Shown in pieces: positions 13,086 through 53,265 of a stretch of 64,000 nucleotides of DNA. The notes beneath the pieces were generated by a model. That model saw nothing but the letters and a program-made list of their open reading frames with translations. It did not search any database and had not been told where the DNA came from. The position numbers were made by a program, and so were the translations under genes. Origin of the DNA: Mytilus californianus (lineage: Eukaryota); contig NW_026262723.1 in NCBI RefSeq assembly GCF_021869535.1, positions 83,018,001 to 83,082,000 of the forward strand, read 5' to 3'. Each line of letters opens with the position of its first letter. Within the stretch, counting starts at the first letter, position 1.

Positions 13086-13310
13086 ATTACATGTATGTTT
13101 CACGAGAATCCGTTAGTTTGATTGGCTAACAACAATCGCGCGTCATTCAAAAATTAACCTTCATATCAAAATAAAATGTTCCATTCGTGATGACACATGC
13201 TTCCATAAAAAAAGTGCACAGGTAAATAAAAGAAAATTTGATAAAACTTTTTTTTCTGGTTTTATTAGCATAAAAACGTAATTATAAGAAATGAATGCTT
13301 CTTTTTGTAA
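13086..13310 (+). repeat. Dispersed repeat with a second copy at about 16415-16628
   Basis: Both start ATTACATGTATGTTTCACGAGAATCCGTTAGTTTGATTGGCTAACAACAATCGCGCGTCATT and stay alignable for about 220 bp. Confidence 0.85.
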
Positions 13311-14566
13311 TTTTATTGGGATCGTGCACACATTTTTAGAATTAAGCGCGGAAGCGCAAAATGTGCTTCGGTCAACACTTTTACACCCTAATAAAATAAC
13401 AAAAAAAGAAGCTTTCAATTTTTAATTAAATCATTGAACTATGAACAAACTGGTTGACTTCTACTTGATAAAGAAAAGGAAGACGATACCAAGGGGATAA
13501 TTTCAAACCATCAGTCGAAGAAACACATAACATTGATTGATTTTTGTTTACTTAACGTCCAGTGGCAAATATTTCATGCATATTCAGGACGAGAACAAGT
13601 TAACAATAAAGACAATAGGTAGGTCCTGTATTAATAGAGGTCACACAGGATCTACCATAAAACTGTTCCATAGTAGAACAGTTCTCCTGAAAGATCCTTG
13701 TAGATTTTAAGAGAGGTTAAAATTTATCCAAACTATACTGAAGGATGAGGAAAAATACCAGTGGAAATTAATGATGCTGGGTTAGGGCATTTTGAATTGC
13801 TATAAGTCTTCTTAGCACCCCGAAGTTGTCCCAATAACTTTTTTTTCTTTTTTTAACATTCATAAATTCTTTATTGCACTCCTTGCTGTTTTAACAAAAT
13901 ATTTACTGTACAGCATTCCATCAAGTATCCCTGTAACATTTATACTGAATATCCAGGGAGAATATTCAGTAAAACTTATTTTATTTTATAAAACTTAAAC
14001 ATAACGAGACCTTCCAACCTTGATACCTGAGGATTCTTGTGTTTTTCATGATTTCACAAAATAAATCTCTGAAAAGGGCTCCATCCCAAGAAACTGCAAC
14101 CTTGTCCCCTACTAGCAAATTAGAAGTACATGTATAAGAATAACTTCACTAAACTTAAATGTTCAATACAGCTGTTAATATGTAATAGGCAAACAGATTA
14201 ATTGTGTATTGTGAGGCCTGACTCCTAAATGGAGTAGTCACGAGTCACTTTAAAAAACAAATGTGTAATTATAGATTGTAAATTCACCATGTCTAAATTG
14301 GTTTGAGACCTATGTTAATAATATACCTATGTTATCCAGATTATAAGAGAATGCAAAAAAGGAATACAATCATATGCAGCCAATACTAAAACAGGTGCAG
14401 AAATACTAACAGCTCAGATGATACATTATGAGGTAGGTTAACAGGTAAGTGAATATGTGTGTGTCTTTCTTTTTTATTCGACAGTTGGGGTTTTCAGTCT
14501 TTATTTCTCTCGCTTCTATGTATCCTTACAAAAACGCACAAAACCATCCAGATGACCATCATATAA

Positions 14567-35503: not shown

Positions 35504-37389
35504 AATGAAAAATGTGTAAAAAACAAAGCCAAACATAGTACGAAGTTAAGTAATCTATTCCTTATGTAGAAAATCCTTGGCATTTCGAAAATGTCAAAAT
35601 TTATAAAAGGACAATTACTCAAAAAAGAAAGCAAAAGAGAAACACCTAGAGGTCAGAATACCGTTTTTTAGCAATGATGATCGTGCTTGAAAATCACATG
35701 TCAAGCTCTTACTACCGCGTCCTGAATTTAGATCAGAAAAGCGAAAATTCGCATTCGCGAGTGAAATTAACATTTATGCCTGAACGTGGTATTTTTTGCG
35801 CAAGAAATAGTAAACAGAAAGCATATGCACTGATACTTTGGATAAGAATACGCATTTGCGTCATCACATATATTAATCTAATAGTTGAATTCGGATGTCA
35901 AACTACCTACCTCAAGTGTTTTGACTCCGGATTCATTGACATTTTATCCGGAATTTTTGTGAACGGAAACCGATAGTGTGCGTATGAAGAGGGTGTATAA
36001 TGTGATGAATCAAGACGTGTAGTATAGCTGTTCAGCACACTTGATGAATACAATTTTCAAAACCGTATCATAGTACAAATATTAAGATGCTATAAGGTTG
36101 AACTAATAAAAGAAAGAAAAAGAAAAAAAATGAAATTTTATAATAAACATACATTCCTGTTTGTGAACTTTTTTCCCGAAAATGGCTTGAATATAATATC
36201 AATAAACACAAATGTCAATTATTTACGGATGGACATTTTATTTATCAAATGAATCTTTTTTTGAAGATTATGAATATATTGCTATACATAATATAAGCTG
36301 TGACTTATAAATCCCTACTAAAACAGTATAAAAGAATTGACATTATGATAGTAATTAATTTTGTTATGATTATTGTAAACATTTATTACGTTTTTTGTGA
36401 GATGCAATGCTTTAAAATCCTTGTGAATTGAAACCACGCAAGTATTTTTTCATTCACGACCTTTTAAAATTTAGATATTTATAGCTAATTTTGAGTACGC
36501 ATCCCTGTTCATTGGTGCTCATACGGTACAAATAATTTTCATAAATGTAATGACTGATCAAATATGTAAGTTGACTTGGATGGAGAGTTGTCTCATTGGC
36601 ACTCATGCCACATCTTCTTATATCTAAGACATAATTCTCGTATACAATTACAATTTTGATTATATTCTATAATTATTAGGAATAAATTCAGTCTCAGTTT
36701 AACCTTAACAATGAATATTCTCTTAGTCTGGTAGTATTTTTTAATGAAATTAGATAATTTTTTTTACAGAAAAATCCTTTTGTTTGATTATCTTTCTGCT
36801 CTCCGATCACTGTGTATCCAACCTTAGAAACATATTTTTACAGAAATATCGTTTTCCTAATTTTCTTCATGCTTTCCCGACATTTTCGCATGCTGTGATT
36901 GAAATACTAAATCTCAAATGTTAAACGTTCAGTTTATTCTGGGTCATTTTATGTCAATAAACTATTCCCAGGTTTATTAATACTACACACACAACGGGAA
37001 GAGGGACCGTCTCAAAGCATGAATTATATAATTGCGTTATCATTATACTTGACATTTAATTATCATTTACATTATTAAAAACACATATTATGATATTTTG
37101 TGAAAAGGCAAATAGGTTCTAATAGTTAAATGATTTTTTGACTGCAACTTAGTCTTTATTGTTTTACTTTCCAATTTACTGTGATTGTTAATGTCACGTG
37201 GTAGCATAGCCATAGAGGAACCGTATCAAAGACGTAGATTACTACCTGTATAAATGATCGAAAACTTTCGAGAAGTTCCGAGAATTTTATCCCGACCAAG
37301 AGATAGCGAGTGGCCCATAGACACATCCAAAACTTACCCGAATAGTTCAGTCATTATATTCCACTGCTCTACGATGGCTACATTAACGC

Positions 37390-37561
37390 CTGAAGGCCTA
37401 GTCAATGAAAAATCGTCAAATAATCATTCGGAATTAGCTCGGCATTTACCTATCTTGATAACATTTAGCTATTAGCTGAAGGCCTAGTCAATGAAAAATC
37501 GTCAAATAATCATTCGGAATTAGCTCGGGATTTACCTATCTTGAAAACATTTAGCTATTAG
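37390..37561 (+). repeat. 86-bp tandem duplication
   Basis: 37390-37475 and 37476-37561, 2 mismatches. Confidence 0.9.
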
Positions 37562-37632
37562 CTGATTGGCTCTCTCTCACAGAGAGCACCAATCAAAATC
37601 CTGGATTCGTGACGCGTTTTTATCGTACATAA

Positions 37633-38084
37633 GGCCTCAGACCACAATTAATTTGCCTATACATTCTTTGTAAAAATAATGACATATAAAAAAAATTACA
37701 CCGCTTCAAACAAAATGACATTTGCTCCACATGAAGATCATCCTTTTCTCAGGAAAATATTACAATGCCAGAAAAATCCATCAGTGCTTTCGTCCGTAAC
37801 ACCTCAATACACATCCATGGGGTTCACCTAACCAACGAAAAGAAAGTAAACACCAAAAATTTGACCTTTGAACTGAAGACAATTTACAACTTTCAATTTC
37901 AAATATTCAAGTTTTGGGTATCATAGCAATTCATTCAAACACTATTCTACCAAAATTAACCAAGAAACACTCACTTTTGCAAATAAAAAGCACAGAAAAA
38001 AATTATGGAAGAAATTACCTATTTTTACTATAGGAACTACATTCCTAGACCACGAGCAAAGGGAATTAATTGTGGTCTGAAGCC
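37633..38084 (+). repeat. Left long terminal direct repeat (452 bp) with its own 21-bp TIRs
   Basis: Starts GGCCTCAGACCACAATTAATT and ends AATTAATTGTGGTCTGAAGCC (20/21 inverted match). Confidence 0.95.
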
Positions 38085-39164
38085 TATTAGACCAACTTTT
38101 TTTCATCTAGTCCTACAAAAATTCATACGAACAATGGAAAATGTATATCGAAGAACTTTACCAACTTATTTGCCATTTAAAGACGTATTAAAAAAGTTAC
38201 ATCATATTTTATGACACAACCCATGTTCACAAATATCTTATCAGTAGAAAGCAATAAAGACGAGTTAGCCCAGCAATGTTAATTTTGAAAAGTTGAATAA
38301 CTTTCCCATTTGTTGGAATATCTTTATGAAATAAAATTTAGCATGCTGAAATAGGTTTCTAGATTTAGACATAATGTTCATTTTATGGTTTTAAAACAAT
38401 TTTAAAGAGAAATAAATTATAAGAGAAATACCATAAGAAAACAATGTTTTTAATTTTAAAAATTTAATAAAAAATAGAAATCAATCTTTTTTCTCCATAA
38501 TTCTTTCATAAAAAATTCAACAAACATATAACGAAGAAAAACATCTTTCAAAAAATTCTAAATTTATTTCAACTTTAGCAAAAATTATGGTTTTAGGAAA
38601 GCACCATTTCAAAGTAATTTCTTTCTTTTCGCATGTATTATAACAACCACTAGATGAGATTTTTTTTTCTGTAAAACATAAAAATTATACATTTTAAGTT
38701 GTATAGGAACATTTTCTAAGTAATATTCTAATTTTTAATTTAAAAAAGAAGAATTCTAGTCATGCAGGTCTATGATTTTTTTTCAATTAAAGTTAAAAAT
38801 GTCCTTTTCAAATTTTGTTCTGAAAATAAAATTCAAAATTAAATTCCATTTCATTTACATTTAAGTAAATATATGTTTTGATAGACTGACTAATCCTAAA
38901 TAAAACATATGTTATCAACCAATATGGAAATAATGTTTGTTTAATATGAAAAAAATGATTCTTAAAGGATGCCCCCTGCTCAGACTACAATAAGTGTACA
39001 TACAACTGCGGTCACTTAATTCTTAATTAATCTAGATAAATGTATCAAACATCACTTGAAGGCATTTACATAATAGGAACAATAAATAGTTTGTAACTAA
39101 CATTCAGCATCAAACTTCTTTAAGTGATTTTTAACTGCTGACTTAAAAAAATTTAATCGTCATC

Positions 39165-41189
39165 ATGTTCAAAAATGGTAATTCTCCATGGAATAAAAAG
39201 AAATCTGGTTTATCGAATCACAAACAACCTAAAAAATCAGCTTTCACAAAAGGTCACACTCCATGGAATAAAGGTACTGAAGTTTCCTGGAACACTGCTA
39301 AAACTAACACTACCTATGAGCGCATGGAATCCAATGAGTATGATCTTGTCGTCAAACCAAGAATGGATGGGATGCTATTAACAACTCCAGACTGCGAAGG
39401 AAATTCTGGTCCGATGTGTATCTTGCGACCAAAGAAGACTCCAACTGTTGATCTGAAAACAGAAATAAAGAACAATTTATTTGACGGAATGAGTATTATT
39501 GACAATGAGAAACTAATGACAATGATTAACAATGCAGTACATCTACATTCAATAAAATCTGAACCTTGTGGTCCGCCGTCATTTGCATACTATAACATTC
39601 AGAAGTGGGGAGTATGTTGGAAGTTTCAAGTTTACTGTGTCCGTTGCCAATTTATTACACCAATGTACAAACTGTACAAAACTATACCATCTCAGAAGCC
39701 AGGTCCAGATCCAGCAGCTGCAAATGTTGGTTTTGCTCTAGGCATCCAAGAGACAGCAATTGGAAATACTAGAGCACAACAACTACTTTCAAATATGAAT
39801 TGTTCACCACCATCAAAAAGTAGTATGCAAAGAACATCAAACAAAGTGTCTGATACATTAGTTGAACTTAACCAAGATGACATGGCTGAGAAGTTGGAGA
39901 TAGTTAAAGCTGTCAATAGAAAGAGAGGAGCCCCTGAAAATGAAATAAACCTAACTGTCGATGTGCGTTACTCAAGTAATACTATAACAAGCAAAAAGAA
40001 ACCTGGTCAGAATGCAAATCAAGCATGTGCAGTCGGCATTGAGACAGTGACAGATAGAAAGTACATTGTTGCAACCGCATCATTAAATCAGATGTGTTGG
40101 ACCGGAGCATGGTTACGCGGCAAGGGATTTACAATTGAATGTCCAAATGGACATCAAGAGTGCACGGCTGATCTACATCGTGCAGCTCCATTGTCAGAGT
40201 ATGAACTTGGGAAAAAGATTGGTAACCAGCTAGCTGTACAAGGAATTCTTGTAAAGTATGCAACAACAGATGGTGATGGTAGATCTGCAAATGGAATAAA
40301 TGATGCCATTCAAGCTCTGCATCCAATGTGGAAGGTAGAGCGGCTAGCAGATCCTATCCATCTGGGAAACGGGCAATTTCGTGCAGCTATGCGTGCTAAT
40401 TTCAGTGACAATATGTTCGGTTGCAGGACAAAAGAGCAAAAGAAAATAATTCAAAAGCTTTTCAGCCAGGACATAAAAGCTAGGTCTTCATTGATTACCA
40501 GTCATCTCATGGAAGTGTATGGCCGTGACATTCAGAAGATATCAGAAGACTTACCAAAAGCTTTCGAAGCTACCATGAGGTGTTATGATGGCGACTGTTC
40601 TATGTGCAGTACCAATTCCATAGTCTGTGCTGGTGCCGAGACCAAAAACTGGTGGAATCGTTCAATATTTCTGTCCTCATATCAGATCACACGCCTGCAA
40701 ATGAATGAAAATGATAAACATTTGTTATTTGAAATTTTAAAAATGAAACTAAGTATCAACGCTCTAGACAGTATGAAGCTGTATGACAATACGAACAAAA
40801 ATGAAGCTACGCATAGGGCCATAAGTGCAAATTTGCCTAAAAATGTGTACTTTAGCAGAAACATGAAAGGTCGACTTGCGGCTACTGTCCACCGTAGTAA
40901 CAATTCCCCTGGCACATCAACAAAAATGAAGTGTGTCAGACTGGGTATTGAACTTAGTAACCGGACAAATGCCTTCCTGGACAGTACCGATCGAGAATGT
41001 GCATACCAGAAAGAATATCAAAAAAGAGAAGAGGTACAGCACCGTAAACTTTCACAAAAGGCAGAAAACTTAGTTGTGCATAAAACATTCAAGGACTTAA
41101 ATAAAGCAAACATTTGTGATGTATATAAAAAAGGTCAACTTGATCCTGTGCTGGATGACCATGCCAGTTGTGTAAAGAAAAGACTTTAA
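39165..41189 (+). CDS. Kolobok-family DDD/E transposase, 674 aa, uninterrupted
   Basis: Candidate triad D266 (LTVDVRYS), D369 (TTDGDG), E547 (TNKNEATH); ERLADPIH motif; Cys/His clusters (H128/C135/C158/C161, C311/C326/H330/C333, C473/C478/C481/C488). Enclosed by the LTDRs. Confidence 0.88.
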   Translation: MFKNGNSPWNKKKSGLSNHKQPKKSAFTKGHTPWNKGTEVSWNTAKTNTTYERMESNEYDLVVKPRMDGMLLTTPDCEGNSGPMCILRPKKTPTVDLKTEIKNNLFDGMSIIDNEKLMTMINNAVHLHSIKSEPCGPPSFAYYNIQKWGVCWKFQVYCVRCQFITPMYKLYKTIPSQKPGPDPAAANVGFALGIQETAIGNTRAQQLLSNMNCSPPSKSSMQRTSNKVSDTLVELNQDDMAEKLEIVKAVNRKRGAPENEINLTVDVRYSSNTITSKKKPGQNANQACAVGIETVTDRKYIVATASLNQMCWTGAWLRGKGFTIECPNGHQECTADLHRAAPLSEYELGKKIGNQLAVQGILVKYATTDGDGRSANGINDAIQALHPMWKVERLADPIHLGNGQFRAAMRANFSDNMFGCRTKEQKKIIQKLFSQDIKARSSLITSHLMEVYGRDIQKISEDLPKAFEATMRCYDGDCSMCSTNSIVCAGAETKNWWNRSIFLSSYQITRLQMNENDKHLLFEILKMKLSINALDSMKLYDNTNKNEATHRAISANLPKNVYFSRNMKGRLAATVHRSNNSPGTSTKMKCVRLGIELSNRTNAFLDSTDRECAYQKEYQKREEVQHRKLSQKAENLVVHKTFKDLNKANICDVYKKGQLDPVLDDHASCVKKRL

Positions 41190-41391
41190 TGATGTAAAGT
41201 CACATATGATTTTCAATTTCACTTAACTGAATATGACTGTGATTATAATTTGGTTTTAAACATGTCAGTGAACTATTAAAAAGACTGATATTATTTCACA
41301 ATTATTCTAAATTCATTGAATGATAAAATGTGTCAGCAAAGTCATGTATACTTATCATGTTTAATTATCAAATAAGTAAAAATTAAATTAT

Positions 41392-41847
41392 TTATTTACT
41401 CAAATTATTATTTGCCATCTTCAGTTCAATTTTACAAGGATGAAGAGGAAATGGGTGTCCTAAACATTTCCCAACAGACACACAAGTCATTCTGCTATTG
41501 TTGAATCCATGTGGTTCAAGTGATAAATGGTCAGTATTTATGCACTTTGAATTATGACACAGATGTGACACATCTAGCCCTTGGAAGTTAAATTTTTTGT
41601 GCTTTATCATGTAGGCAAGTCTGTGAACATGAATTTTTGTCCATCCAATGGCATTTGGGAATTTGCAATTTAAAACTCCATATTTGCCATTGGATGTACA
41701 AGCCCCAGTCCAAATATTACATTCTCCATTTTGGCCAAGCATGGCATTTTCATACAATTTAGTCAGATATTTTTCAAAAAATGCCTCCATTTTAACTTTG
41801 TAAAGTTTAAGGGTCATGTCAGTGCACATAAGAGTATGAATTTGCAC
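41392..41847 (-). CDS. Small His-Me finger (I-PpoI/His-Cys box-like) endonuclease; likely ATG at 41829, 41817 or 41790
   Basis: ECNIWTG..GKYG..HVHRLAY..DVSHLCHNSKCINTDHLSLEPHGFNNSRMTC..C.GH..C parallels I-PpoI SHLCHNTRCHNPLHLCWES..N..R..C. The track start at 41847 is a GTG. Confidence 0.9.
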   Translation of the reverse strand: MQIHTLMCTDMTLKLYKVKMEAFFEKYLTKLYENAMLGQNGECNIWTGACTSNGKYGVLNCKFPNAIGWTKIHVHRLAYMIKHKKFNFQGLDVSHLCHNSKCINTDHLSLEPHGFNNSRMTCVSVGKCLGHPFPLHPCKIELKMANNNLSK

Positions 41848-42082
41848 ACTAAAAATAATTTTGTGACCTTATTTTTTACAAATTAATCCTACAATTAAAA
41901 TTTCTTGTTTTTAAAATCATATTTTTGAAATAAATTAAATTTCAAATTTAAATTTCTCCTTCAAACTTATATCAAAGGAAAGCCCTTTTCATTACGATTC
42001 TAAAACAGTGATTGTTATTCAAATACTGTAAAAAATAAGGTCAGAAAGTCATTTTTTGTGTGCAATCAACACCCGTCTCCTA

Positions 42083-42534
42083 GTCCTCAGACCACAATTA
42101 ATTTGCCTATACATTCTTTGTAAAAATAATGACATATAAAAAAAATTACACCGCTTCAAACAAAATGACATTTGCTCCACATGAAGATCATCCTTTTCTC
42201 AGGAAAATATTACAATGCCAGAAAAATCCATCAGTGCTTTCGTCCGTAACACCTAAATACACATCCATGGGGTTCACCTAACCAACGAAAAGAAAGTAAA
42301 CACCAAAAATTTGACCTTTGAACTGAAGACAATTTACAACTTTCAATTTCAAATATTCAAGTTTTGGGTATCATAGCAATTCATTCAAACACTATTCTAC
42401 CAAAATTAACCAAGAAACACTCACTTTTGCAAATAAAAAGCACAGAAAAAAATTATGGAAGAAATTACCTATTTTTACTATAGGAACTACATTCCTAGAC
42501 CACGAGCAAAGGGAATTAATTGTGGTCTGAAGCC
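42083..42534 (+). repeat. Right long terminal direct repeat (452 bp)
   Basis: Identical to 37633-38084 except position 2 (GTCC vs GGCC) and 42255 A vs 37805 C. Confidence 0.95.
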
Positions 42535-43014
42535 ATAAAGAGTTCAGGCCCTCGCGAGTGGGAGAGTCGATCACGGGGAGGGACTGAATTATTCGGGTTA
42601 ATCCAAAACTCGCCAATATATAAGCGTGAACCCCTCAGGGGGTTCACGAAATGAGAAATGTAATGAGTGACCACATTCCTTGTTAATGACCTAATAGTGT
42701 AAGCAACAAAATGATTATGTCACGGGATAATCCGTGTTTAATCAATGCCAAAACGTTGACGTAATTTGTGTTTTTAATTGCTAATTTCTTCAAAACTACT
42801 TTTACTTTACACATGAAATTTGGCACACACATGCATCGTGTCTTATTGCTTTAATCAGAGTAAAAATTATCGTGATGATACACGTAATAATCTTGCTTTC
42901 GATGAAAATGTGGTAAATTTAAATTTTAGTCTTACTAAAATGCTGAAATAATTATACTAAAATCACTTAAATACTTTCCGCTTTTGTTATAGGATATATT
43001 TAATATATAAATAT

Positions 43015-43861: not shown

Positions 43862-44113
43862 AAAATTGAGAATGGAAATGGGGAATGTGTCAAAGAGGCA
43901 ACAACCCGACCATAGAGCAGACAACAGCCGAAGGCCACCAATGGGTCTTCAATGCAGCGAGAAACTACCGCACCCGGAGGCGTCCTTCAGCTGGCCCCTA
44001 AACAAATATGTATACTAGTTCAGTGATAATGGACGTCATACTAAACTCCAAATTATACACAAGAAACTAAAATTAAAAATGATACAAGACTAACAAAGGC
44101 CAGAGGCTCCTGA
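43862..44113 (+). repeat. Longest M1 repeat copy, abutting the truncated 3' end of the Penelope-like RT
   Basis: Extends from the M1 head to GGCTCCTGACT (reverse complement of AGTCAGGAGCC, shared with M2). Confidence 0.8.
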
Positions 44114-45810
44114 CTAATTTTTCAGTAATACATAAATTTGTCTCGCTAAAATCTAATACGTTGTTACATACACGAGCGTATCGTACAAGTTGAGATATAT
44201 AAACACCATAAGATGGTGACTGGGGAACGTCACCATCTAAAAATGGATAATTAACGATATGAAATGAAAAATCATCTCTTTTATCATAAATTTTTGTATT
44301 AAGCTTCCCGTTAATGATATAGATATCAAGATCGAGGAAAGGACAGTGGTCATTGTTAGTATTAGCTTTATTTAAAGTAAGTTCAACAGGATAAATTTCT
44401 TTAGTATACATACTGAAGTCATCATTATTGAGAGCCAATATATCATCCAAATATCTAAAAGTATTGTTAAATTTTTGTATCAGATGTTGTTTCGATGGGT
44501 CTTTGCTGATTTTAGTCATAAATTGTAACTCATAACAATACAAAAAAAGGTCCGCAATAAGTGGTGCACAGTTAGTCCCCATTGGAATTCCGATAACTTG
44601 ACGATATACGGAATCTCCAAAGCGAACAAAAATGTTATCAAGTAAAAATTCAAGGGCAGATATAGTATCAGAGCATGTCCAATTGACATAGCTAATAAGT
44701 GGTGCACAGTTAGTCCCCATTGGAATTCCGATAACTTGACGATATACGGAATCTCCAAAGCGAACAAAAATGTTATCAAGTAAAAATTCAAGGGCAGATA
44801 TAGTATCAGAGCATGTCCAATTGACATAGCTCTTTTGTTTGTTGCTACTAAAAATGACCTACAAGAGTTTGAACATATGTATTCGCATTCCGACTTTTTA
44901 AATGCCCATTTAATTAGGTGTGTGAATTTTTTCTTAATAAGAATATGAGGCAAAGTGGTATATAGGGTAGAAAAATCAAAACTTTGAACAGATTCAAAAT
45001 CACCAATATATGCATGCAATTTATCAAGTACTTCCAACGAGTTTTTGACACTCCAAAAGTAGTTAATTCCACTATTTTCAATAGCCTTATTTGAACAATT
45101 TATTATCAGGTTTTTGATTGTACCAAGTGTACTAGTAAGTAGAATAGACAATTTAGTAGTGGAACAATGACTTGAAGACGAAATAAATCTATATTTGTAA
45201 GGTGATTTGTGTAGCTTCGGAAGCCAGTACATAGTTGGGACTTTCATTGTATTTGGTTCTGCTTGTAAAGAAGTAGCTAATAGTTTATGTTTGTTACAGA
45301 TATCCTTTTCTGAAAATGAAGTCTGTTGAAACGTTGGTGAATTCGTGATTTCCTTTTGCAGAACCTCAATGTAAAATTTACGTCAAACTATAATGATATT
45401 ATTAGCAGCTTTATCAGCCGGGACAAAAACAAATTCCTTGGCTAGTTCTTTTAGTTTCTGTTTGATAAAATAGAATTTTTATGGTTGTTGTTAAGAGTAA
45501 AATGTTCTTTAAAATGACTTTTTATTATGTTGTATACATATATCAACTATCTTCATTACTGAATTAAAAAAAGAGTCCAAAGATTTTTTGTCAGCTTTTT
45601 CCCGTTTTATCCATTTCAAACAGTAAGCACGAAGTGAGTCGTGGATGATATTACGACACTCATTCCAATTAATAATTGACGAGGGACGATATTTAGGTCC
45701 TTTACTGAGGAATGGTTTTAACTCTCGGTCGCGAACGATGTTAAGGTCTCCTGTTATAACATGGAAAATGGGGCCATAAGTGTATTCGGAATTACTATAA
45801 AGTCTATATT
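44114..45810 (-). mobile_element. Penelope-like retroelement (Naiad-type) RT region, truncated and non-functional
   Basis: HVITGDLNIV..KGPKYR, VPADKAANNIIIV*RKFY, MYWLPKLHK..RFI, FDFSTLYTTLPH, GIPMGTNCAPLIADLFL, RYLDD, YDKRDDF..VNYPFL..P..SYGVYISQL. Frameshifts near 45500 and 44850; 138-bp internal duplication. Confidence 0.85.
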
Positions 45811-45915
45811 GCCGGAAAAACTGTTTCTAAGGGTAGTATTAAAAGGGTCATTTGAAAGTTGCCTCCCTTTTCTAAACAATTGATTCCTCATAGACCTGAG
45901 ATCAGAATCATATAC

Positions 45916-46430
45916 AATTATGGCCCGTAGAGAAGGTGAAAATCCAAAATTGTCAACACGAAAAGGTTATTTCGCTGAGGGCGCAGTCCGAAGTGAAATA
46001 ATTCTATAGGGTTGACAATTTTGGATATTCATCGCTTCTAAGGGGTCACAATTGTTTTATTATACCGAACTAACAGTGGAAGGGCCTTTTAAAAAATTGA
46101 AAAAGCACGTAACCTACTGATCATAACAAACACAAGTAAACGTTCGAAAATAAATTTGTGTCTAAGAATTTCAACAAAAGTAGAATCTTTTTGTGAAATA
46201 TTGATGGCCCTGAAAAGGACCGTTTATAAGAGATATCCCCGGCACTAGATGCATTTCCAAAGCCTTGTTTCCTCGTCACTTGATGGGCTTCCTGTAACTT
46301 GAAGTTGAACGTTGCCATTTTGTTTACTTACGTCTGTGACGTCATTTTCATGGGAGATAACTCGTGTACAAATCAAGAAACTCAAAAGGTTATTCATCAG
46401 TGAATAATAGGTTTAATCACCGCTGGTATA
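45916..46430. mobile_element. Palindromic non-autonomous element C (Crypton-like, tentative)
   Basis: Imperfect palindrome 45916-46053, short IR TTATACC/GGTATAA and TGACGTCA at 46337. Confidence 0.5.
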
Positions 46431-46529
46431 AATTTTTAGGGTTATTCGTCCCTCCTTGCAATTAAATGAAAATTAACTGAATTATTCCATGTCACGTGAT
46501 AACGTGTTACCCAATAGAATTGTTTATTA

Positions 46530-47637
46530 TATATGTAAGGTATAATAATACCAACTCTTGTGTTTTACCTTCTTTTTGCCCTGCTTTGGTAATCTTAAAC
46601 ATAATTTAGCAGCATCTAAAATAATAGACTCCAACTTATCACTTGCAGCATCTATTCTTTCTTGAGAGTTGACTATATCTGTCTAAATTCTGGTTTAGAA
46701 ATGACGTCTAGAAATTTTATACTTGAAGTTTCATCCCATATAAACTGTTTGGGACATTTTTTATATGTTTGATTTTTAGTTTCAACACAAGGATTTGCAG
46801 AGCTAATAATGCACCATTGCAAAAGACAATGGGCATCAGATAAGGTAGGAATGAAGTCCTCAACCTTAAAACATAAAGTTTGATTCAATAATGAATCAGA
46901 TATTAGAGTATAGTCCACTGTGCTCGACCCATTTGTAGTATGGCAAGTAAATTTACCGTAATCTACCATTTAATATGCGTAGATTTTGGCTGGAACAAAG
47001 ATCTAATAGATTTTTACCACTTGAGTGTATTTGAATCAAAACTTTCCCTAGGCTTACAATTATCAATCTCATATGTTTCAAAAGTAGGATTATGATGATT
47101 TTCATCTCTCAAGATGAAATCCTGTGAGTTACCAACCCGGGCATTAAAATCGCCACAGATAAGAATGTCCCCTATATCGTTATACTTAGATACATCTTCT
47201 TGTATGAGGTCGACGATAAATTTTTCACCGTTTTTTTCAATACTTTTGGTAATCGGTGACTGCGAGGGAGGATCATTAACTACACAACAATAAACATCTT
47301 TGGGAAGATGAAAATCCTTTTTGGGAATAAACCAGTGGAAGTTGGTGTTTGTTATTTGAAGTATTTTAATTCCTTGTTTTAGATTAGTTTTATAGAGAAT
47401 GGCTAACCCCCCAAAATGCCTTTGGTTCCTGGAAATGTCTCTGCAGATTGGGAAATAGTTAAAGCCGGGGAAGCTAATGGGGTCACCATAACCTACATGT
47501 GTTTCTGCCAATAAGACAATGTCATGTTCAGAATTTTTTTTAAGAAAAAGGGGGTCCAATGTTTTGTTTAAGAACAAAGTTTTGGAGATTAACCCACCTA
47601 TATTCCAAAAGCACATCTTAAGATTTGAGATCTTCAT
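46530..47637 (-). pseudogene. LINE ORF2 5' part: APE endonuclease and linker
   Basis: CFWNIGGL..DIVLLAETH..GGLAIL..GDFNARVG..STVDYTL..SDAHC; frameshift near 47000; ends at a KSWY-like linker. Confidence 0.85.
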
Positions 47638-48301
47638 ATTTGCTTATCTATAATATTATTGTTGTACAATAAAAAATGTTATATGAGCAGGCAAATTAAG
47701 AAAAAAGTAACAATAATACAATAGTTACATTTGGTAGATGAAATCTAATGTGTAACCTTTCTACAGATGGCAAAAAAAAGCCTGTTATTTTGAGAAAAAA
47801 GTTACAATGTTGTATGTGCTATAAATGGTAACAATGTTATATGATTAACTGTTGTATGTAATGAGTATTTGCCCAAAGAGTATAATAATACCTTTGTTAT
47901 TGGACAAAAAAAAAACAAATATGACTAAAAAACAAATAAAACTATTTAGCAAAAATTAAGGCCTCTGATGATTTTGTTTTGCCTTTTTAGAAAACTTTAG
48001 CTGAATTTGGAGTCAAGTTAATTTAAGTAATGGAATATAAAGTGAATTTGAATTAAAATGTATTAACTTGCAAAAAATTAGAATATCCTGACCTGAAAAT
48101 GTATTTTAACCTATATATAAACATCAAAACCGATTTTGGTATTTGCGTATAAATTTGTTATTATATGAAAAATATTTAAGATTAGTAATACCATCTCTCC
48201 AATACATATATATATATATGCATAACTTATATAGTGCAATAGTTGCTCTTTCAAAAATGTTCAATCTATATCAAGCATGTAATTTTAATATATGAAAATA
48301 A

Positions 48302-49610
48302 TTATATATATAATATAATGTTAATTGTTAAGGCTTGATAAAAATAAGCTACATATATGCATGCCTTGAAACTATGTAAATTAACCAGTCTTTTGGTTTT
48401 TTTTGCATTTGGTTTATTTGCGTTTTCGCTATTTGAGTTTGGTTTGTTGACAAAGTACTTAATACCCAGACATGTACATATTGACTCTTTGAAGTTTGTG
48501 GCTAACTGAGAAGTCCCTGCTTGGCTCAGATGGTATTTGTCAGTCATGTTGAGAAATTTGGACTGCAGTACACATCTGCGTGACAAATTGCTGTTGTCAC
48601 AAATGAAAACTGATGAATCAGCAAACGTGAACTTAATCATCGCATTCAGTAAGTCTACTTTCGTGTTGTATCCATCTAGCATAAGGGTAGCTAAGGAGAT
48701 AACTTTCTTAGCTCTAGGCCATTTTTCATTACAAATGTTAACGTTGGATTGCATTTGTTCAAGACAGTATTCAGGAGTGTTTTCTTTTAATTCATTTGTC
48801 AATGAGTGTAATAGGACTAATTCGGTTTCTTCTGTTGATTTTTCAATTACTTCAATAGTTTCCTTGAATTTGTAAGCTATTTTCTTGTTTGTAGAGAATT
48901 TGGCAGAGAGCTTTTCGCATTCAATGTTTTTAGTATTTGAGGTACCAATCAAGAGAACATGTGGCTTCTTTGGTTTATGAGTTGGCGGAGCCTGAATAAA
49001 GCTGTTGTTTTCTGATTGAGATATCGATAATGCATGCATTTTAAGACTTCGGATTTCATCATATTTTTGTTCCATGTCTGTTTTTAACATCTTAATGTTT
49101 TCCTCAAGAGAAGTAATATCTTGATTCTTGGCTGAAATTTCCAGGTTCATAGTATCAAGGTCAACATGAAGCTGGTCGATGAGCTCGTTATTTCTTTTTT
49201 TAGTTTCACGATGAGATGAAGCTTCTACCTCATTCTTGCTGATGAGAACTGCAATTTGAAGTTCAAATTCATTTTTCTATGTTTGTAGCTTTGTTTCCAT
49301 TTGGGACATTTTTATATCAGACATATTCTTTTCGGTTTGTGTTTTTGACAAAAGTTGATCATATTTTATTTTGAAGTCACTGTTAATATTCTGGATTTTT
49401 TCTTTTAATGCATGAATTTCACTTTGCTGTTTGTCAATTATCTGCTCGTGTTTGTTTGTACATGACTCCTTCGATGATTGTGAAAGGGAAACAAATTTTT
49501 CTTGGATGCTTTGCAGTTATGAGAAGCCCTTAGTTCTGAAAATGTTGTGCACTTTGCATGTTAAAGGACCCTTGCAGCAACTCTTTCTGAGGGGTCCATA
49601 GTAGGCTGTT
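48302..49610 (-). pseudogene. LINE ORF1: coiled coil plus SGNH/GDSL-esterase-like domain, disrupted
   Basis: Long heptad-like region, then VLLIGTSN, LLHSLTNEL and DKYHLSQAGTSQLA (SGNH blocks I, III, V-like). In-frame stop near 49270; lies upstream of the ORF2 endonuclease. Confidence 0.7.
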
Positions 49611-51274
49611 GATGTCACAATTCTTACCCATACAATCGCATTAGTCATAAAAAAATATACGCTAACCTATCAGTACTTTATTTAAACCATTTTATTCAAG
49701 TACCTAGTGAAATATTTGCCGCTGACAACCGGTATTTAATTAAACAGAATCAAAATTATATTCAATTCTTTAGTAATAAAACTGCTTAACATTCAGAAAT
49801 ATATCTTTAAATGTACATGTTATGTAAAAAAATATCAAATGAAAGCCATTTCCTGTTGGCTTTTTCTTGGGAAACTCTTGTGGGAAAAGTTCACAAAAGA
49901 AAAAGAGCAAGATGAATGTGATGACGAGTTTTCTTTAACTGAATAACAGAAAGGTAACTATTAAACTAAAAGAAACAGAAACGTCTGATGCACAATGCGG
50001 ACCACGAAGAACCATTAGTAACACTATGTTTACAATAGAGACCAACAGTCCATTAACAAAAAGTGAATTGGTTATTGAGGAAGGAAAGACGTCTCAGTAT
50101 TAGAAATAGGCCATTTTTATAAAGGTTAATGGCCAAACTAGTTGTGTTCAAACAGAAGCAAACAGTAGTCGTTAATTTGACGACGGTCATGAACTTGAAG
50201 TTATTGACCTTGAATGCGACTCTGAATTTGACGGAGAAGAATGTATCTAGTCATCTGTAATACTATTTCCGACAGAGAAATTGTTAATTGAAACAGCCAA
50301 AAAAAAGAGACATCAGAAGTTATCAGGATACCTGATTCTACCAGATATAAGCACCAAATCGGAGAATTTAACCACTCAAAATATCAAAATCATCAGGAGT
50401 TTAATGAGACATTTGAAACATTTGTGCATGAAACCTTTGGTAACATCAATTTATCAGGGAAGGTAGTCTGAACAAGTTTAAGTTTTATATAGTGTTGCAA
50501 AAAATGCAAATCGTTTCTCGTCTTCTCGTCATAGACTCGGTAAACAAATGCAGAAAAGGACACTGAACTAAATTCAAAGACTGAAAACCCCTTGGTGTAA
50601 ACATTCCATGACAATACATTTCTCTTTCTTATTGCTTTCTTTTATCCGTGTTTATCACATTGAAATGTTGTGTCAGGGACTTTAGTATAAAAAAAAAATA
50701 CTGCAGTCTAAGTGAAATAAGAATGTTGTAGAGTGCAATACTTCTCAATAACCTTTCTTTTCTGTTTTTTTTTTTTTTTTGAAGATAAATGAATATGGTA
50801 AAAAACTGTTAACCAATTTAAATTCGCAATTGATTTATTTTTGCGACTTCATCAAGTAAAAAAAATACACGAATATAAATAGTCGCGAACATAAATCGGG
50901 AAATCGATATAAAAGGGCTAAACGAGGAAAAAAATATCTGAGAAAATAAGTTGGTTTACAGTAAGTGTGCAAAGATAAAAAAATGCTTGAGACAAAGAAA
51001 TATAAGAACAAGTATGTCCATAGGACAACATGCCTCGCTTGCACTGTCACGTTTCTATGTTCAGGGAATTGTGAAATACTAGTAGCAGTAGGGGTGAAAC
51101 CCTAATTTGGCATATTATGTGAAAGTTCACACCAAAATGAACATGTGCACTAAGTTTAATTTGGTGAGACCTCAACTTCATTATGAACTACCTTAACCTA
51201 AAACTTTAAATTGATATGGAAAATCAGAAAACATTATACCCCTCTACTAAATAAGAATGATAACCACATGCATT

Positions 51275-53265
51275 TTATTTAGAACAAACTACACAATTGA
51301 TAGCTTTGTCGTCGGTGTAAGGAGGGCATGGTAAAGAACCACATTTAGTCGTAGTTACAAAGAGTAAACTACCATCATTATTCACATGTCCGCCGGGAAT
51401 ATATTCTGGGTCTCTGTCCATACAGAGGTAGGATGAAGCACTGTATGCACGATGACCGGAAACAACTAGACCTTGATATTCCTTTTGCCATCCAGAATAG
51501 CAAGACTTTCTACCAGGTATCATTAATGTGTTTTGCGTCTTTTTGTTTCTGCAGACTGCACATGGGACATCTTCGTCGTGAGCATCAGGTTTAAGTATAT
51601 TTTCCTGATATTCTGCGCCATATAATAAGCTGGTACCATTTCCGGATATATTTGTTAGTTCAGGATCACCTGGCATGCACAGTAAATTTGAAGGACCACC
51701 ATGTCGACTAGTGTATGATGCGTGTAAATAGAGCTGTCCTGCAGCATAACCTGAAAACAAACTTACATTAGGTATGAGGTTTATATTAAATTTCATTAAA
51801 ATTACGGCCATAAAAGCTCTTTCATTCATATATAAATGGTGTTAAAATACTCAAAGTGCGACCGCTACACAACATTAATCTCCCGCACAAATGTCATGTA
51901 CATGTTGCTTAAGAGTCTTTAAGAATAAACACTATGTTCAGTTCTTAATCGGTAAAAATAACATCTGATTTAAAATGGTAGTAAATTATAGATGATTACT
52001 CTGAATTGATTTGTTTAGTTAAAATGGAAGTACAAGAGTTATTATTTTGGCATAGACGTATATTTTTCTCGATTTTTACAAATTCATCAGCAAGATATTC
52101 CAAGCCATATATACAGAACTCTGTCGGGGATAAAAAAAAAACCCATAAAAACTATGGATTGTCTTTCCTTTAATCATTTTACAAAAACACATAAAATTTG
52201 CATTAAATATCGAAATAGTCTACAACTGCTATTTGTACCACTGAATAACATTTTGATATTAAAGACGCGTTTAAAATTGTTCCAAAACAAAAGCAATATT
52301 TGATTGCGTCAGGTAAATTATCCCGTTAGTTACTAGCTGCCGAGAAAATAGTTGTTCTCTATTGAGGAGGCAAAAAAAATTGTTTTTTTTTCTAAATTAT
52401 AGAAGGCCATATTATAATTATGAGGCGAAAGGGTGTTCTGAAAGTATGTAGGGCCGATTGACGACAATTTTGACTGCCATTTGAAAATGAGTTAAGCAAG
52501 TAAGCTTTACAAAATTTACCAATGGACCCCTCAAATAGAGTTGTTTCTCAAGTTTTGTATCCAGCAAACAATGTAACACTACTTCAACATGTTCTTTTTA
52601 ATCAGACCGGCGGGTGTAACTACTGATAAAATACTGGATACCTCTCCCATTACTGTTGGTGTCCGACGGAGGAAATCCATATTGTTATATATTTTTTTCA
52701 CTCGATCTATCCCCATTTTTTGCAATCTTGCATGTTATTCAAACTGTTCATCTTTGTATAAATATCGTTTCATTTATAATTAAATGTGGTTCTTACCTGA
52801 GTACACTAATTCTGTGTTATCTCCAGAACAGACTGACCTCCCCCAGCGAACATATGTAGATCCAGCACCTACAATTTAAATGTCCATATATCAGCATTTA
52901 TTGTAGCCTCTCTCTCATAATACATTGCATTGTCTTTACTTTTTCGTGTATTACTTTTAAGCCACAGAAGACATAAGTCGTACGTTTTTGGTCTTCATAC
53001 GTAATTTATCGCATTTAACTAATATGAAAATAATGAGATGTGGTATATTGGCAATGATTATAAAATACTACTTAAGTGACAACTTACTTGCATTATTTTC
53101 TAGTTGAGAAAGCTGTTCAGTAAGTTTTTGGATCGTAATTTCCATTTGAGCAAATCGTGTTGCAACATCCGGATCATTCAGTAAAAGTCTTTTTGAATTT
53201 TCTCCTATAACAACTGCATATATCAAACAAGTTAGGTAAAGCACTTGTTTCATCGCTTCCACCAT
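51275..53265 (-). CDS. Secreted short-chain collagen C4/spongin-related NC1-domain protein, 3 exons, 241 aa
   Basis: Exons 53265-53088, 52868-52797, 51750-51275 (726 nt, phases match). Signal peptide, short coiled coil, then STYVRWGRSVC..LVYSGYAAG..GGPSNLLC..GAEY..DVPCAVC..IPGRKSC..GW..EY.G..C.D..CGSLPCPPY..CVVCSK. Confidence 0.88.

What the first reader, a model, noticed from the sequence alone, without database searches (positions are those of the whole stretch)
37629..42538. Intact, young composite-like DNA transposon: LTR-like direct repeats that each carry TIRs, around a transposase plus homing-type nuclease
Seen: two 452-bp direct repeats differing at 2 positions, each bounded by 21-bp inverted repeats; a 4-bp ATAA duplication outside the whole unit; an unbroken 674-aa DDE ORF; a convergent His-Me nuclease ORF; no RT or integrase. 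This resembles a bacterial composite transposon or an LTR element but uses DNA-transposon chemistry. Established: it matches the KolobokP lineage (Kojima and Bao 2022; ~450 or ~660-bp LTDRs, rich in bivalves), so the system class is described but little studied. Inference: near-identical LTDRs and intact ORFs suggest a recently active copy.
Basis: partly seen in the sequence, partly recalled or inferred. Interest (0 to 1): 0.92.

Follow-up and report, generated by a model that had tools for sequence, protein, structure and literature searches.

The report
Young intact KolobokP composite DNA transposon
This is a complete, very young copy of KolobokP, a kind of DNA transposon described in 2022 and common in mussels and other bivalves, so it is an ordinary new member of a known kind and a good candidate for testing how these elements move and multiply.

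Summary
Two 452-bp direct repeats (37633-38084 and 42083-42534) differ at 2 positions. Each is bounded by 21-bp inverted repeats with GG...CC termini. They flank a 3998-bp interior carrying an unbroken 674-aa DDE transposase gene and a convergent I-PpoI-like His-Me nuclease gene, and ATAA is duplicated outside the unit.

All architectural and motif features of the lineage were tested and met. The transposase is colinear with KolobokP-1_MoPh and KolobokP-2_MoPh in that paper's own alignment.

New findings here:
- Twelve paralogous copies of the host repeat show the empty site with a single ATAA.
- The family has only three near-identical loci in this 1.65-Gb genome: this copy, a monomer with TSD CGCT, and a 58-kb array of 13 units.
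- In the array, every shared variant sits in neighbouring units, the signature of repeated unequal crossover.
- A 95.5% identical copy exists in Mytilus coruscus, and both genes show purifying selection.
- No clear transcription was seen.

The class is published, with 228 families, many of them from mussels. The scan has also noted KolobokP-like composites elsewhere in this genome.

The parts
37629..37632 (.). Left copy of the 4-bp target-site duplication, ATAA.
   Evidence: Read directly in the sequence. Twelve paralogous copies of the host repeat carry a single ATAA at this place. Two extra bases (AC) lie just to its left in the window only.
37633..38084 (+). Left long terminal direct repeat (LTDR), 452 bp, non-coding. 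It is identical to the family consensus.
   Evidence: Twelve LTDRs on C99 are 100% identical to it.
37633..37653 (+). Outer left terminal inverted repeat, GGCCTCAGACCACAATTAATT (5'-GG terminus). It contains the palindrome AATTAATT.
   Evidence: The same 22 nt open the KolobokP-1_PeMa LTDR, and nearly the same open KolobokP-1_MoPh.
38064..38084 (-). Inner inverted repeat that closes the left LTDR (AATTAATTGTGGTCTGAAGCC).
   Evidence: (I9), 20 of 21 complementary.
38085..42082 (+). Internal region (INT), 3998 bp. It begins TATTAG and ends CTCCTA.
   Evidence: the same junctions occur in all 13 units of the C99 array and in the C88 copy.
39165..41189 (+). Transposase gene, 674 aa, unbroken. Features:
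- N-terminal duplicated G-x-[ST]-P-W-N-K motif (residues 5-11 and 30-36)
- H128/C135/C158/C161
- catalytic D266, D369, E547
- CCHC finger C311/C326/H330/C333
- DxxH motif D396-H399
- finger C473/C478/C481/C488
   Evidence: Pfam PF20700, E 4e-64. These residues are invariant or nearly so in 28 homologues of 34-68% identity. The protein is colinear with KolobokP-1_MoPh_1p and KolobokP-2_MoPh_1p. dN/dS is 0.195 against the M. coruscus copy.
41392..41829 (-). His-Me finger (His-Cys box, I-PpoI-like) nuclease gene, 145 aa from the first ATG and 132 aa from the ATG shared with homologues (41790). The motif S88-H89-L-C91...C96...H101-L...E105...N110 has the same spacing as I-PpoI S97, H98, C100, C105, H110, E114, N119.
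   Evidence: Pfam PF05551, E 4.5e-11. I-PpoI is the only solved relative found by sequence, E 0.0014. The motif residues are invariant in 15 homologues. AF2 pLDDT is 88 and I-PpoI is the top Foldseek match, probability 0.99. dN/dS is 0.116.
42083..42534 (+). Right LTDR, 452 bp, with 2 private changes: 42084 G>T in its inner inverted repeat, and 42255. Its outer terminus ...GAAGCC-3' is intact.
   Evidence: All three DNA runs laid show G at 42084.
42535..42538 (.). Right copy of the target-site duplication, ATAA.
37336..37628 (.). Left part of the host repeat that the element interrupts. It is MITE-like and holds 86-bp tandem units at 37390-37565.
   Evidence: (D2, I21).
42539..42648 (.). Right part of the same host repeat. 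In paralogues it is contiguous with the left part.
   Evidence: (joint 37626>42535).

Best explanation
The feature is an autonomous monomer of a KolobokP transposon (Kolobok superfamily), 4902 bp, inserted into a MITE-like repeat.

Movement. The transposase is a DDE enzyme with catalytic D266/D369/E547, a CCHC finger, a DxxH motif and a second finger. It is inferred to bind the 21-bp inverted repeats. Using the two outermost ones it moves the whole LTDR-INT-LTDR unit and makes a 4-bp duplication of a non-specific target.

LTDRs. Each LTDR carries both inverted repeats, so it is in principle a small non-autonomous element of its own. This comes from the paper and was not seen in this family.

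Nuclease. The second gene encodes an I-PpoI-like His-Me nuclease with all catalytic and zinc-binding residues in place. It has been kept under purifying selection. Its most likely role is the one Kojima and Bao proposed: it cuts within or at the ends of LTDRs, and repair of the cut promotes unequal recombination between LTDRs. That recombination multiplies LTDR-INT units in place.

Shown here:
- the architecture and the motifs
- transposition, from 12 paralogous empty sites and a second copy with its own 4-bp duplication
- youth, at 5 differences in 4902 from the family consensus
- a 13-unit array that grew by repeated unequal crossover

Inferred: catalysis by either protein, the nuclease's target, its link to array growth, and present-day activity.
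For: Anatomy:
- The repeats, inverted repeats, duplication and ORFs are as described.
- The published description matches point by point.
- The LTDR terminus equals that of KolobokP-1_PeMa and nearly that of KolobokP-1_MoPh.

Proteins:
- The transposase is colinear with KolobokP-1/2_MoPh_1p, including the N-terminal PWNK motifs.
- The signature residues are invariant in 28 homologues from Mytilus, Haliotis, Pinctada, Patella, Mizuhopecten, Lottia and a nemertean.
- The nuclease matches Pfam PF05551 and I-PpoI by sequence and by fold, with an invariant motif.

Transposition and copies:
- Twelve of 12 paralogues read CGT-ATAA-AGAG without the element. The same joined form appears in contigs of three DNA runs and in RNA reads.
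- The C88 monomer has TSD CGCT.
- The C99 array is (LTDR-INT)13-LTDR, 58,302 bp, with INTs 99.70-99.90% identical to the window's INT.
- The window copy has only 5 private differences.
- The transposase is intact in 11 of the family's 15 copies and the nuclease in all but one.

Array growth and selection:
- 21 of 21 shared variants sit in contiguous units, against 0 of 100,000 permutations. The blocks overlap without nesting, and differences rise with distance between units.
- dN/dS is 0.195 for the transposase and 0.116 for the nuclease against a 95.5% identical copy at a non-orthologous locus in M. coruscus.
Against: - No clear transcription. In the one raw RNA run (about 6% of it read) only a few reads fall in 39090-39487 and none fall elsewhere in the element.
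- Whether this insertion is polymorphic among individuals could not be determined.
- No young solo LTDR of this family was found (only 40 of 175 candidates scored). Mobility of single LTDRs is therefore not supported for this family.
- The left junction has 2 unexplained extra bases.
- The C99 array has no target-site duplication.
- Pfam names the transposase domain 'Mutator-like', not Kolobok.
- No tree against other Kolobok lineages was built, because Repbase sequences are not on hand.
- Nothing here links the nuclease to array growth. Unequal crossover needs no dedicated nuclease.
Confidence: 0.93

Rival explanations
1. The copy is a young but now silent KolobokP element. It inserted recently, but the family is no longer moving, for example because the host silences it. 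The intact ORFs would then only reflect the short time since insertion.
For: The RNA run X21 shows almost no reads on the element. Only three loci of the family exist in the assembly. Most copy-number gain came from in-place array growth, not new insertions.
Against: Only one RNA sample was read, and only 6% of it; germline or larval expression would be missed. The window copy differs from the consensus by 0.1%. Both genes are under purifying selection in the lineage.
Confidence: 0.35
2. The window copy was mobilised from the left end of the C99 array and carries a few nucleotides of donor flank with it. This would point to an intermediate that keeps flanking bases on one side, as in copy-out or 5'-flap pathways.
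For: The last 5 nt left of the window copy (CATAA) equal the last 5 nt left of the C99 array. The window has 2 bases that all 12 empty sites lack, right at that junction. The paper reports that excision removes 1-5 flanking bp on one side only. The window copy equals the array consensus except for private changes.
Against: Four of the 5 shared bases are the true target duplication, since ATAA is present in the empty sites, so only one base (C) is really extra and shared. The base before it differs (A versus G). The C88 copy has a clean duplication without filler. Two similar-looking cases (C99 right flank, M. coruscus left flank) are better read as stumps of deleted INTs.
Confidence: 0.1
3. 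The structure is an assembly duplication or a chance composite: two unrelated MITE insertions that happen to flank a transposase gene.
For: Repeats of this kind are hard to assemble, and the number of units in the C99 array rests on the assembly alone.
Against: The same junctions are found at three loci, in another species' assembly and in contigs of independent short-read runs. The architecture is conserved across 228 published families. In run X1 the LTDR-to-INT depth ratio is 1.3-1.6 by contig, against 18:15 (1.2) in the assembly.
Confidence: 0.01
4. The element is a Mutator-like element (MULE), as the Pfam name of the transposase domain suggests, and not a Kolobok.
For: Pfam PF20700 'Mutator-like transposase' matches at E 4e-64, and UniRef names the homologues the same way.
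Against: The duplication is 4 bp, not the 8-10 bp of MuDR elements (established knowledge). The termini are GG...CC. The CCHC finger after the first D and the finger between DxxH and E are the signature given for KolobokP and its nearest Kolobok lineages. The protein aligns end to end with named KolobokP transposases. The Pfam label is a domain name, not a superfamily placement.
Confidence: 0.02

Closest known systems
KolobokP-1_MoPh and KolobokP-2_MoPh (Modiolus philippinarum; Kojima and Bao 2022, PMC9587614, Table S1 and Data S3)
   Same: Sizes are close: 4894 and 4877 bp against 4902 bp here, with LTDRs of 453 and 454/445 bp against 452 bp. TSD is 4 bp and the TIRs are 18-21 bp. The LTDR of KolobokP-1_MoPh opens with nearly the same sequence. 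The transposases are colinear from the N-terminal MFKxGxxPWNK motif to the C-terminus; by eye about four residues in five are identical in the catalytic core.
   Different: It is a different family in a different genome. No 17-19-mer taken from this LTDR occurs in the paper's consensus file (that file is machine-read and has errors). Numeric identity could not be computed, because the published sequences are not held as tool sequences.
Copy in the Mytilus coruscus assembly GCA_011752425.2, contig CACVKT020009046.1 (protein annotated 'unnamed protein product')
   Same: It is 95.5% identical in DNA over 4820 bp, with the same LTDR/INT junctions. The transposase frame is open over all 2025 nt.
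   Different: It lies at a non-orthologous locus. Its right LTDR is cut at position 370, its nuclease gene has a 1-bp deletion, and a stump of another INT lies to its left. Whether it belongs to one of the named KolobokP-n_MyCo families was not settled.
I-PpoI, a His-Cys box homing endonuclease of a Physarum group I intron (PDB 1A73, 1CZ0)
   Same: It has the same catalytic and zinc motif with the same spacing (S-H-L-C-H-N...C...H-L...E...N). It is the only solved relative by sequence and the best match by fold.
   Different: Identity is about 18-19% and TM-score only about 0.4. The gene sits in a transposon, not in an intron. Its target site is unknown, and homodimer formation could not be assessed.
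Bacterial composite and IS26-type pseudo-composite transposons
   Same: Two direct copies of a unit that has its own inverted repeats bracket an interior, and the whole moves as one. Tandem multiplication of units occurs in both.
   Different: Here the flanking repeats are non-coding and the transposase lies in the interior. The host is an animal. The architecture is stable over phyla and not opportunistic.
LTR retrotransposons
   Same: Both have long direct terminal repeats, and both give rise to solo repeats and tandem arrays through recombination between the repeats.
   Different: There is no RT, integrase or other ORF. The repeats have 21-bp inverted ends. The chemistry is DDE cut or copy of DNA. 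The two repeats are not regenerated at insertion, so their likeness does not date the insertion.

Membership tests
KolobokP (Kojima and Bao 2022) | LTDR-INT-LTDR architecture with LTDRs of about 450 bp or about 660 bp | tested here: met
   Two LTDRs of 452 bp around a 3998-bp INT. Published range.
KolobokP (Kojima and Bao 2022) | Each LTDR has its own short terminal inverted repeats, with termini 5'-RR...YY-3' | tested here: met
   A 21-bp TIR with 1 mismatch and termini GG...CC. The inner terminus of the right LTDR is mutated to GT in this copy only.
KolobokP (Kojima and Bao 2022) | Target-site duplication of 3-5 bp without strong sequence specificity, outside the whole unit | tested here: met
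   ATAA here, confirmed by 12 paralogous empty sites. CGCT at the C88 copy. The C99 array has none.
KolobokP (Kojima and Bao 2022) | Kolobok-type DDD/E transposase on the direct strand: catalytic triad, C/DxxH motif, a zinc finger between that motif and the last E, and a CCHC finger after the first D | tested here: met
   D266, D369, E547; D396-P-I-H399; C473/C478/C481/C488; C311/C326/H330/C333. All are invariant or nearly so in 28 homologues. The signature is as described.
KolobokP (Kojima and Bao 2022) | Downstream His-Me finger (His-Cys box, I-PpoI-like) nuclease on the complementary strand | tested here: met
   The genes are convergent, 202 bp apart.
KolobokP (Kojima and Bao 2022) | Transposase groups with named KolobokP transposases rather than other Kolobok lineages | tested here: inconclusive
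   The protein is colinear with, and highly similar to, KolobokP-1/2_MoPh_1p when read against the paper's supplementary alignment. No tree was built, because Repbase and the published sequences cannot be loaded into the tools.
KolobokP (Kojima and Bao 2022) | The family also occurs as multimers (LTDR-INT)n-LTDR and as solo LTDRs | tested here: inconclusive
   Multimer: met, with 13 units on C99. Young solo LTDRs: none among the 40 candidates scored. Only older, truncated LTDR relics of 70-91% identity were found.
Classical Kolobok (Kapitonov and Jurka 2007) | [quoted passage not shown] | tested here: not met
   The duplications are ATAA and CGCT. The length is right but the sequence is not TTAA, as the paper reports for KolobokP in general.
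MuDR/MULE (name of the Pfam domain) | 8-10 bp target-site duplication and long TIRs bounding the transposase gene directly | tested here: not met
   The duplication is 4 bp, and the termini are 21-bp TIRs on direct repeats. The MuDR duplication length is established knowledge, not tested here.
LTR retrotransposon | Reverse transcriptase and integrase between the long terminal repeats; TG...CA termini | tested here: not met
   There are only two ORFs of 80 aa or more, neither an RT nor an IN. The termini are GG...CC.
Bacterial-type composite transposon | The flanking repeats are insertion sequences that encode the transposase | tested here: not met
   The LTDRs are 452 bp and hold no ORF of 80 aa or more. 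The transposase gene lies in the interior.

The most novel reading that the evidence does not exclude
This family is active now and records its own mechanism. On this reading the window copy was launched from the left end of the 13-unit array on another chromosome and took donor-flank bases with it: the shared CATAA, and the 2 bases absent from all empty sites. That would be the first acceptor-side evidence that KolobokP moves through an intermediate that keeps a few flanking nucleotides. The array's mosaic units would then be the product of nuclease-induced unequal crossover, which makes this species a natural system for testing the still untested dual-propagation model.
Probability: 0.1. Interest if true: 0.6.

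Novelty: new member of a known kind. Interest (0 to 1): 0.3.

Why it matters
KolobokP is the only known eukaryotic transposon lineage that pairs a DDE transposase with a homing-type nuclease. A 2026 review (PMC13565253) states that the proposed role of that nuclease, inducing unequal crossover to multiply the element, still awaits experiment.

This copy adds nothing new in kind. It does offer material for that experiment:
- Both proteins are intact, and the transposase is identical to the one encoded by two units of the array.
- The outer termini are intact.
- Paralogues give a defined empty site.
- A 13-unit array in the same genome carries a variant pattern that documents stepwise unequal crossover.

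For genome annotation the practical points are these:
- Such elements should not be called LTR elements or dated by LTR logic.
- The Pfam label 'Mutator-like' hides their Kolobok identity.
- 58-75 kb arrays of them exist in this genome.

Tried and rejected
- **Horizontal transfer between species.** The element's 31-mer share in a run of another species label (X7, organism B) is 0.76, against 0.29 for a control locus (window 16001-24000). However, X7 has only 575 Mb of contigs. The gap is therefore explained by coverage of single-copy DNA, not by divergence. In organism C the element and the control give the same ratio. No inference was drawn.
- **Presence or absence of this insertion in other individuals.** The joined form 37626>42535 is seen in three DNA runs and in RNA, but at depths that show it comes from paralogues of the host repeat, not from an empty allele. 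This was not resolved.
- **Expression.** One raw RNA run gave only a few reads at 39090-39487, which is no support.
- **Nuclease homodimer.** The complex-prediction job on two copies gave no verdict, with scores of 0.00 and 0.00. This is no evidence either way.
- **Candidate nuclease site.** I looked for a conserved block or palindrome inside the LTDR. Conservation is flat across 7 related LTDRs, and apart from AATTAATT in the TIRs only one weak palindrome was found. Nothing usable came of it.
- **Matching the element to a named family.** Exact 17-19-mers found no hits in the paper's consensus file, which is machine-read and contains errors.
- **Solved structure related to the transposase.** None was found at E up to 10.
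- **Literature on Pfam PF20700.** None was found.
- **Naming the genome.** I recalled that 1.65 Gb in 175 scaffolds might be a particular Mytilus assembly. A paper search did not confirm this, so the organism is left unnamed. The 95% identical M. coruscus protein shows only that it is a close relative of that species.
- **Solo LTDRs with duplications.** I looked among older relics (L019-L026). Their ends are truncated or decayed.

Full report
**1. The observation**

The repeat search and a direct alignment show two direct repeats, 37633-38084 and 42083-42534. Each is 452 bp and they lie 4450 bp apart start to start. They differ at two positions: position 2 (G versus T at 42084) and 37805 C versus 42255 A.

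Each repeat opens GGCCTCAGACCACAATTAATT and closes AATTAATTGTGGTCTGAAGCC. This is a 21-bp inverted repeat with one mismatch. ATAA stands immediately outside both ends (37629-37632 and 42535-38).

Between the repeats lie exactly two ORFs of 80 aa or more. One is 39165-41189 on the + strand, 674 aa. The other is 41392-41847 on the - strand, convergent with the first and 202 bp from it.

**2. It is not an artefact**

The LTDR as query finds the same structure at two other places in the window's own 1.65-Gb genome.

- On contig C88 there is a 4882-bp monomer flanked by CGCT on both sides.
- On contig C99 there is a 58,302-bp array of 14 LTDRs and 13 interiors at a 4450-bp period. Every LTDR/INT junction is identical to those in the window.

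Contigs of independent short-read runs cross both junction types (table 8). A Mytilus coruscus assembly holds a 95.5% identical copy with the same junctions.

**3. Transposition is shown by empty sites**

The element sits inside a high-copy MITE-like repeat. Twelve of 12 paralogous copies that I fetched run straight through...TTTTATCGT-ATAA-AGAGTTCAGG..., with one ATAA and no element. The same joined form appears as a joint in contigs of three DNA runs and in RNA reads.

The window reads CGT-AC-ATAA[element]ATAA-AGAG. The 4-bp duplication is therefore real. Two extra bases sit just outside its left copy, and I cannot explain them.

**4. What it is**

It describes this kind of element in full:

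- LTDR-INT-LTDR architecture
- LTDRs of about 450 or about 660 bp with their own TIRs
- termini RR...YY
- duplications of 3-5 bp without target specificity
- a DDD/E transposase on the direct strand
- an I-PpoI-like His-Me nuclease downstream on the other strand
- solo LTDRs and multimers
- 228 families in seven phyla, richest in bivalves

Its Table S1 lists mytilid families of nearly the same size as this element (4902/452/4/21 for full length, LTDR, TSD and TIR). Examples are KolobokP-1_MoPh 4894/453/4/18, KolobokP-2_MoPh 4877/454-445/4/21 and KolobokP-6_MyEd 4898/451/4/20. The first 22 nt of the LTDR are those of KolobokP-1_PeMa and nearly those of KolobokP-1_MoPh.

In the paper's transposase alignment, KolobokP-1_MoPh_1p and KolobokP-2_MoPh_1p run colinear with the window protein. 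The match extends from the N-terminal MFKxGxxPWNK...TPWNKGTEV through the catalytic core to the C-terminal KGQLDP.

**5. The transposase**

Pfam gives PF20700 ('Mutator-like transposase') at E 4e-64. That is a domain label, not a superfamily placement.

In an alignment with 27 homologues of 34-68% identity (Mytilus, Haliotis, Pinctada, Patella, Mizuhopecten, Lottia, a nemertean and metagenome contigs), the following are invariant or nearly so:

- D266, D369 and E547
- C311/C326/H330/C333, the CCHC finger after the first D
- D396 and H399, the C/DxxH motif
- C473/C478/C481/C488, the finger between that motif and E
- an upstream H128/C135/C158/C161 set

This is the signature the paper gives for KolobokP and its nearest Kolobok lineages. 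No solved structure is related by sequence.

**6. The nuclease**

- Pfam gives PF05551 (zinc-binding loop of homing endonucleases) at E 4.5e-11.
- The only solved relatives by sequence are I-PpoI entries, E 0.0014. The motif SHLCHN..C....HL..E....N aligns with the same spacing as I-PpoI S97, H98, C100, C105, H110, E114 and N119.
- These residues are invariant in 15 homologues. Most homologues start at the second in-frame ATG (41790), which gives 132 aa.
- An AlphaFold model (pLDDT 88) finds I-PpoI first (probability 0.99, E 0.015, TM about 0.4). I-HmuI, NFI and SMAD MH1 domains follow. The first two are the matches the paper got with HHpred.
- A homodimer prediction gave no verdict.

**7. Age and state of the family**

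The own genome holds 15 interiors of this family: the window copy, the C88 copy and 13 in the C99 array.

The window copy differs from the consensus of the array units at three interior sites (38202, 38610, 38617) and two sites in the right LTDR. That is 5 of 4902 positions. All three DNA runs laid show the consensus letters there.

The window transposase is identical to that of units 2 and 9. Eleven of the 15 transposase frames are open. Units 11-13 share a stop and unit 1 has a frameshift. The nuclease frame is broken only in unit 10.

The conclusion of youth stands on these other grounds.

The C88 copy belongs to a slightly different subfamily. It has 11 substitutions in the transposase gene, 7 of them at third positions, and only 3 residue changes. 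It shares several variants with the dominant contig of a run with another species label.

Against the M. coruscus copy, dN/dS is 0.195 for the transposase (39.5 synonymous and 30.5 non-synonymous differences). It is 0.116 for the nuclease (18 and 10). Both genes have therefore been kept by selection in the transposing lineage.

**8. How the array grew**

Among the 13 units there are 44 biallelic sites. Of these, 23 are private to one unit and 21 are shared.

All 21 shared variants are carried by neighbouring units, in 8 distinct blocks. None of 100,000 random orders of the units reproduces this. The blocks are partly nested (10-13, 11-13, 12-13) and partly overlapping without nesting (2-3, 3-4, 3-5). 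Unit 3 is therefore a mosaic. Mean differences rise from 6.2 between neighbours to about 13-15 at the longest distances.

This is the pattern of repeated local duplication by unequal crossover with breakpoints inside units, spread over time. It is not the pattern of one burst of rolling-circle copying or of independent insertions. It supports the unequal-crossover half of the published model. It says nothing on whether the nuclease induces the crossover.

The array has no target-site duplication. Its right flank (TATTA-ATCTTTTTTT) looks like a roughly 20-nt stump of a fourteenth interior. The right end is therefore probably a deletion breakpoint. The M. coruscus copy has a similar stump of an interior on its left.

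**9. What could not be shown**

- Transcription. One raw RNA run, about 6% of it read, gave a few reads at the 5' end of the transposase gene and nothing else.
- Polymorphism of this insertion. The flanks are repeats and only one read-laying run was allowed.
- Horizontal transfer. The comparison with a control locus is confounded by coverage.
- A nuclease target.
- Young solo LTDRs. None was found among the candidates scored.

**10. Comparison and verdict**

The element works like, and is a member of, KolobokP. All tested defining features are met. Only the formal tree against other Kolobok lineages is missing.

- It is not a classical TTAA-specific Kolobok.
- It is not a MULE, since its duplication is 4 bp.
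- It is not an LTR element, since it has no RT or IN.
- It is not a bacterial-type composite, since its flanking repeats are non-coding.

The genome holds many more KolobokP families with open frames, at 45-57% protein identity. These include other multimers, among them one of at least 19 units on C2. Other first readers of this scan noted KolobokP-like composites elsewhere in this genome.

The finding is therefore a correct identification of a new, young member of a published kind. Interest is modest. It would rise only if activity, or the donor-flank reading of the left junction, were confirmed.

Noticed in passing
own genome, C99:49330679-49388980 (loci L031-L040): A (LTDR-INT)13-LTDR array of the same family, 58,302 bp, with INTs 99.70-99.90% identical to the window's INT. 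All shared variants lie in neighbouring units and some units are mosaics. There is no target-site duplication, and the right flank looks like a roughly 20-nt stump of a 14th interior.
   Followed up: yes
own genome, C2:27386807-27460282: At least 19 tandem transposase frames of another KolobokP family (45% protein identity to this one), all with the same score. The period is 4050 bp, with a shorter step of 3581 bp recurring after every few units (3, 6 and 4 steps apart). The shorter step fits units that lack an LTDR between two interiors, arranged in a higher-order repeat.
   Followed up: no
own genome, C121:16590900-16601876, C121:49041905-49052789 and C99:77213702-77227457: Three further three-unit multimers of other KolobokP families (52-57% protein identity), mostly with open frames. 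The first look found 906 candidate matches to the transposase in the genome.
   Followed up: no
window 37627-37632: The left junction has two bases (AC) that 12 of 12 paralogous empty sites lack. The last five bases of the left flank (CATAA) are the same as those left of the C99 array.
   Followed up: partly
window 37336-37628 and 42539-42648: The host of the insertion is a MITE-like repeat with 17-nt inverted ends (37336-37352 and 42582-42598) and internal 86-bp tandem units. The first look found more than 800 candidates in the genome, with copies 94-98% alike, and RNA reads match it.
   Followed up: partly
window 39177-39197 and 39252-39272 (residues 5-11 and 30-36 of the transposase): A duplicated G-x-[ST]-P-W-N-K motif sits at the N-terminus of the transposase. 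It is conserved in the published KolobokP alignment (GGTPWNKG, GRTAWNKG, GYTPYSKG, GNTPHNKG), but the paper's main text does not discuss it. It may be the DNA-binding part.
   Followed up: partly
locus L055 (Mytilus coruscus, CACVKT020009046.1:586806-598830, reversed): A 95.5% identical copy at a non-orthologous locus. The transposase frame is open, the nuclease has a 1-bp deletion, the right LTDR is cut at position 370, and a 12-nt stump of an interior end (ATCAACA..TCCTA) lies left of the left LTDR. It is probably a decayed multimer.
   Followed up: partly
window 41506-41508 (nuclease residue G108) in units 2, 6 and 7 of the C99 array: Three array units carry G108R or G108V, two residues before the catalytic N110. 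The changes are shared by neighbouring units 6 and 7.
   Followed up: no
window 44073-51829, - strand: A run of ORFs on the minus strand includes an endonuclease/exonuclease/phosphatase domain (47017-47637, Pfam PF03372, E 2.8e-8). It is probably a decayed non-LTR retrotransposon.
   Followed up: partly
window 24934-25637 and 12907-15879: A roughly 700-bp repeat has many copies 96-99% alike across the genome, so it is a young high-copy family. Separately, an 82-97% identical duplicate of 12907-15879 lies about 190 kb upstream on the same contig (C143:82839515-82842224).
   Followed up: no
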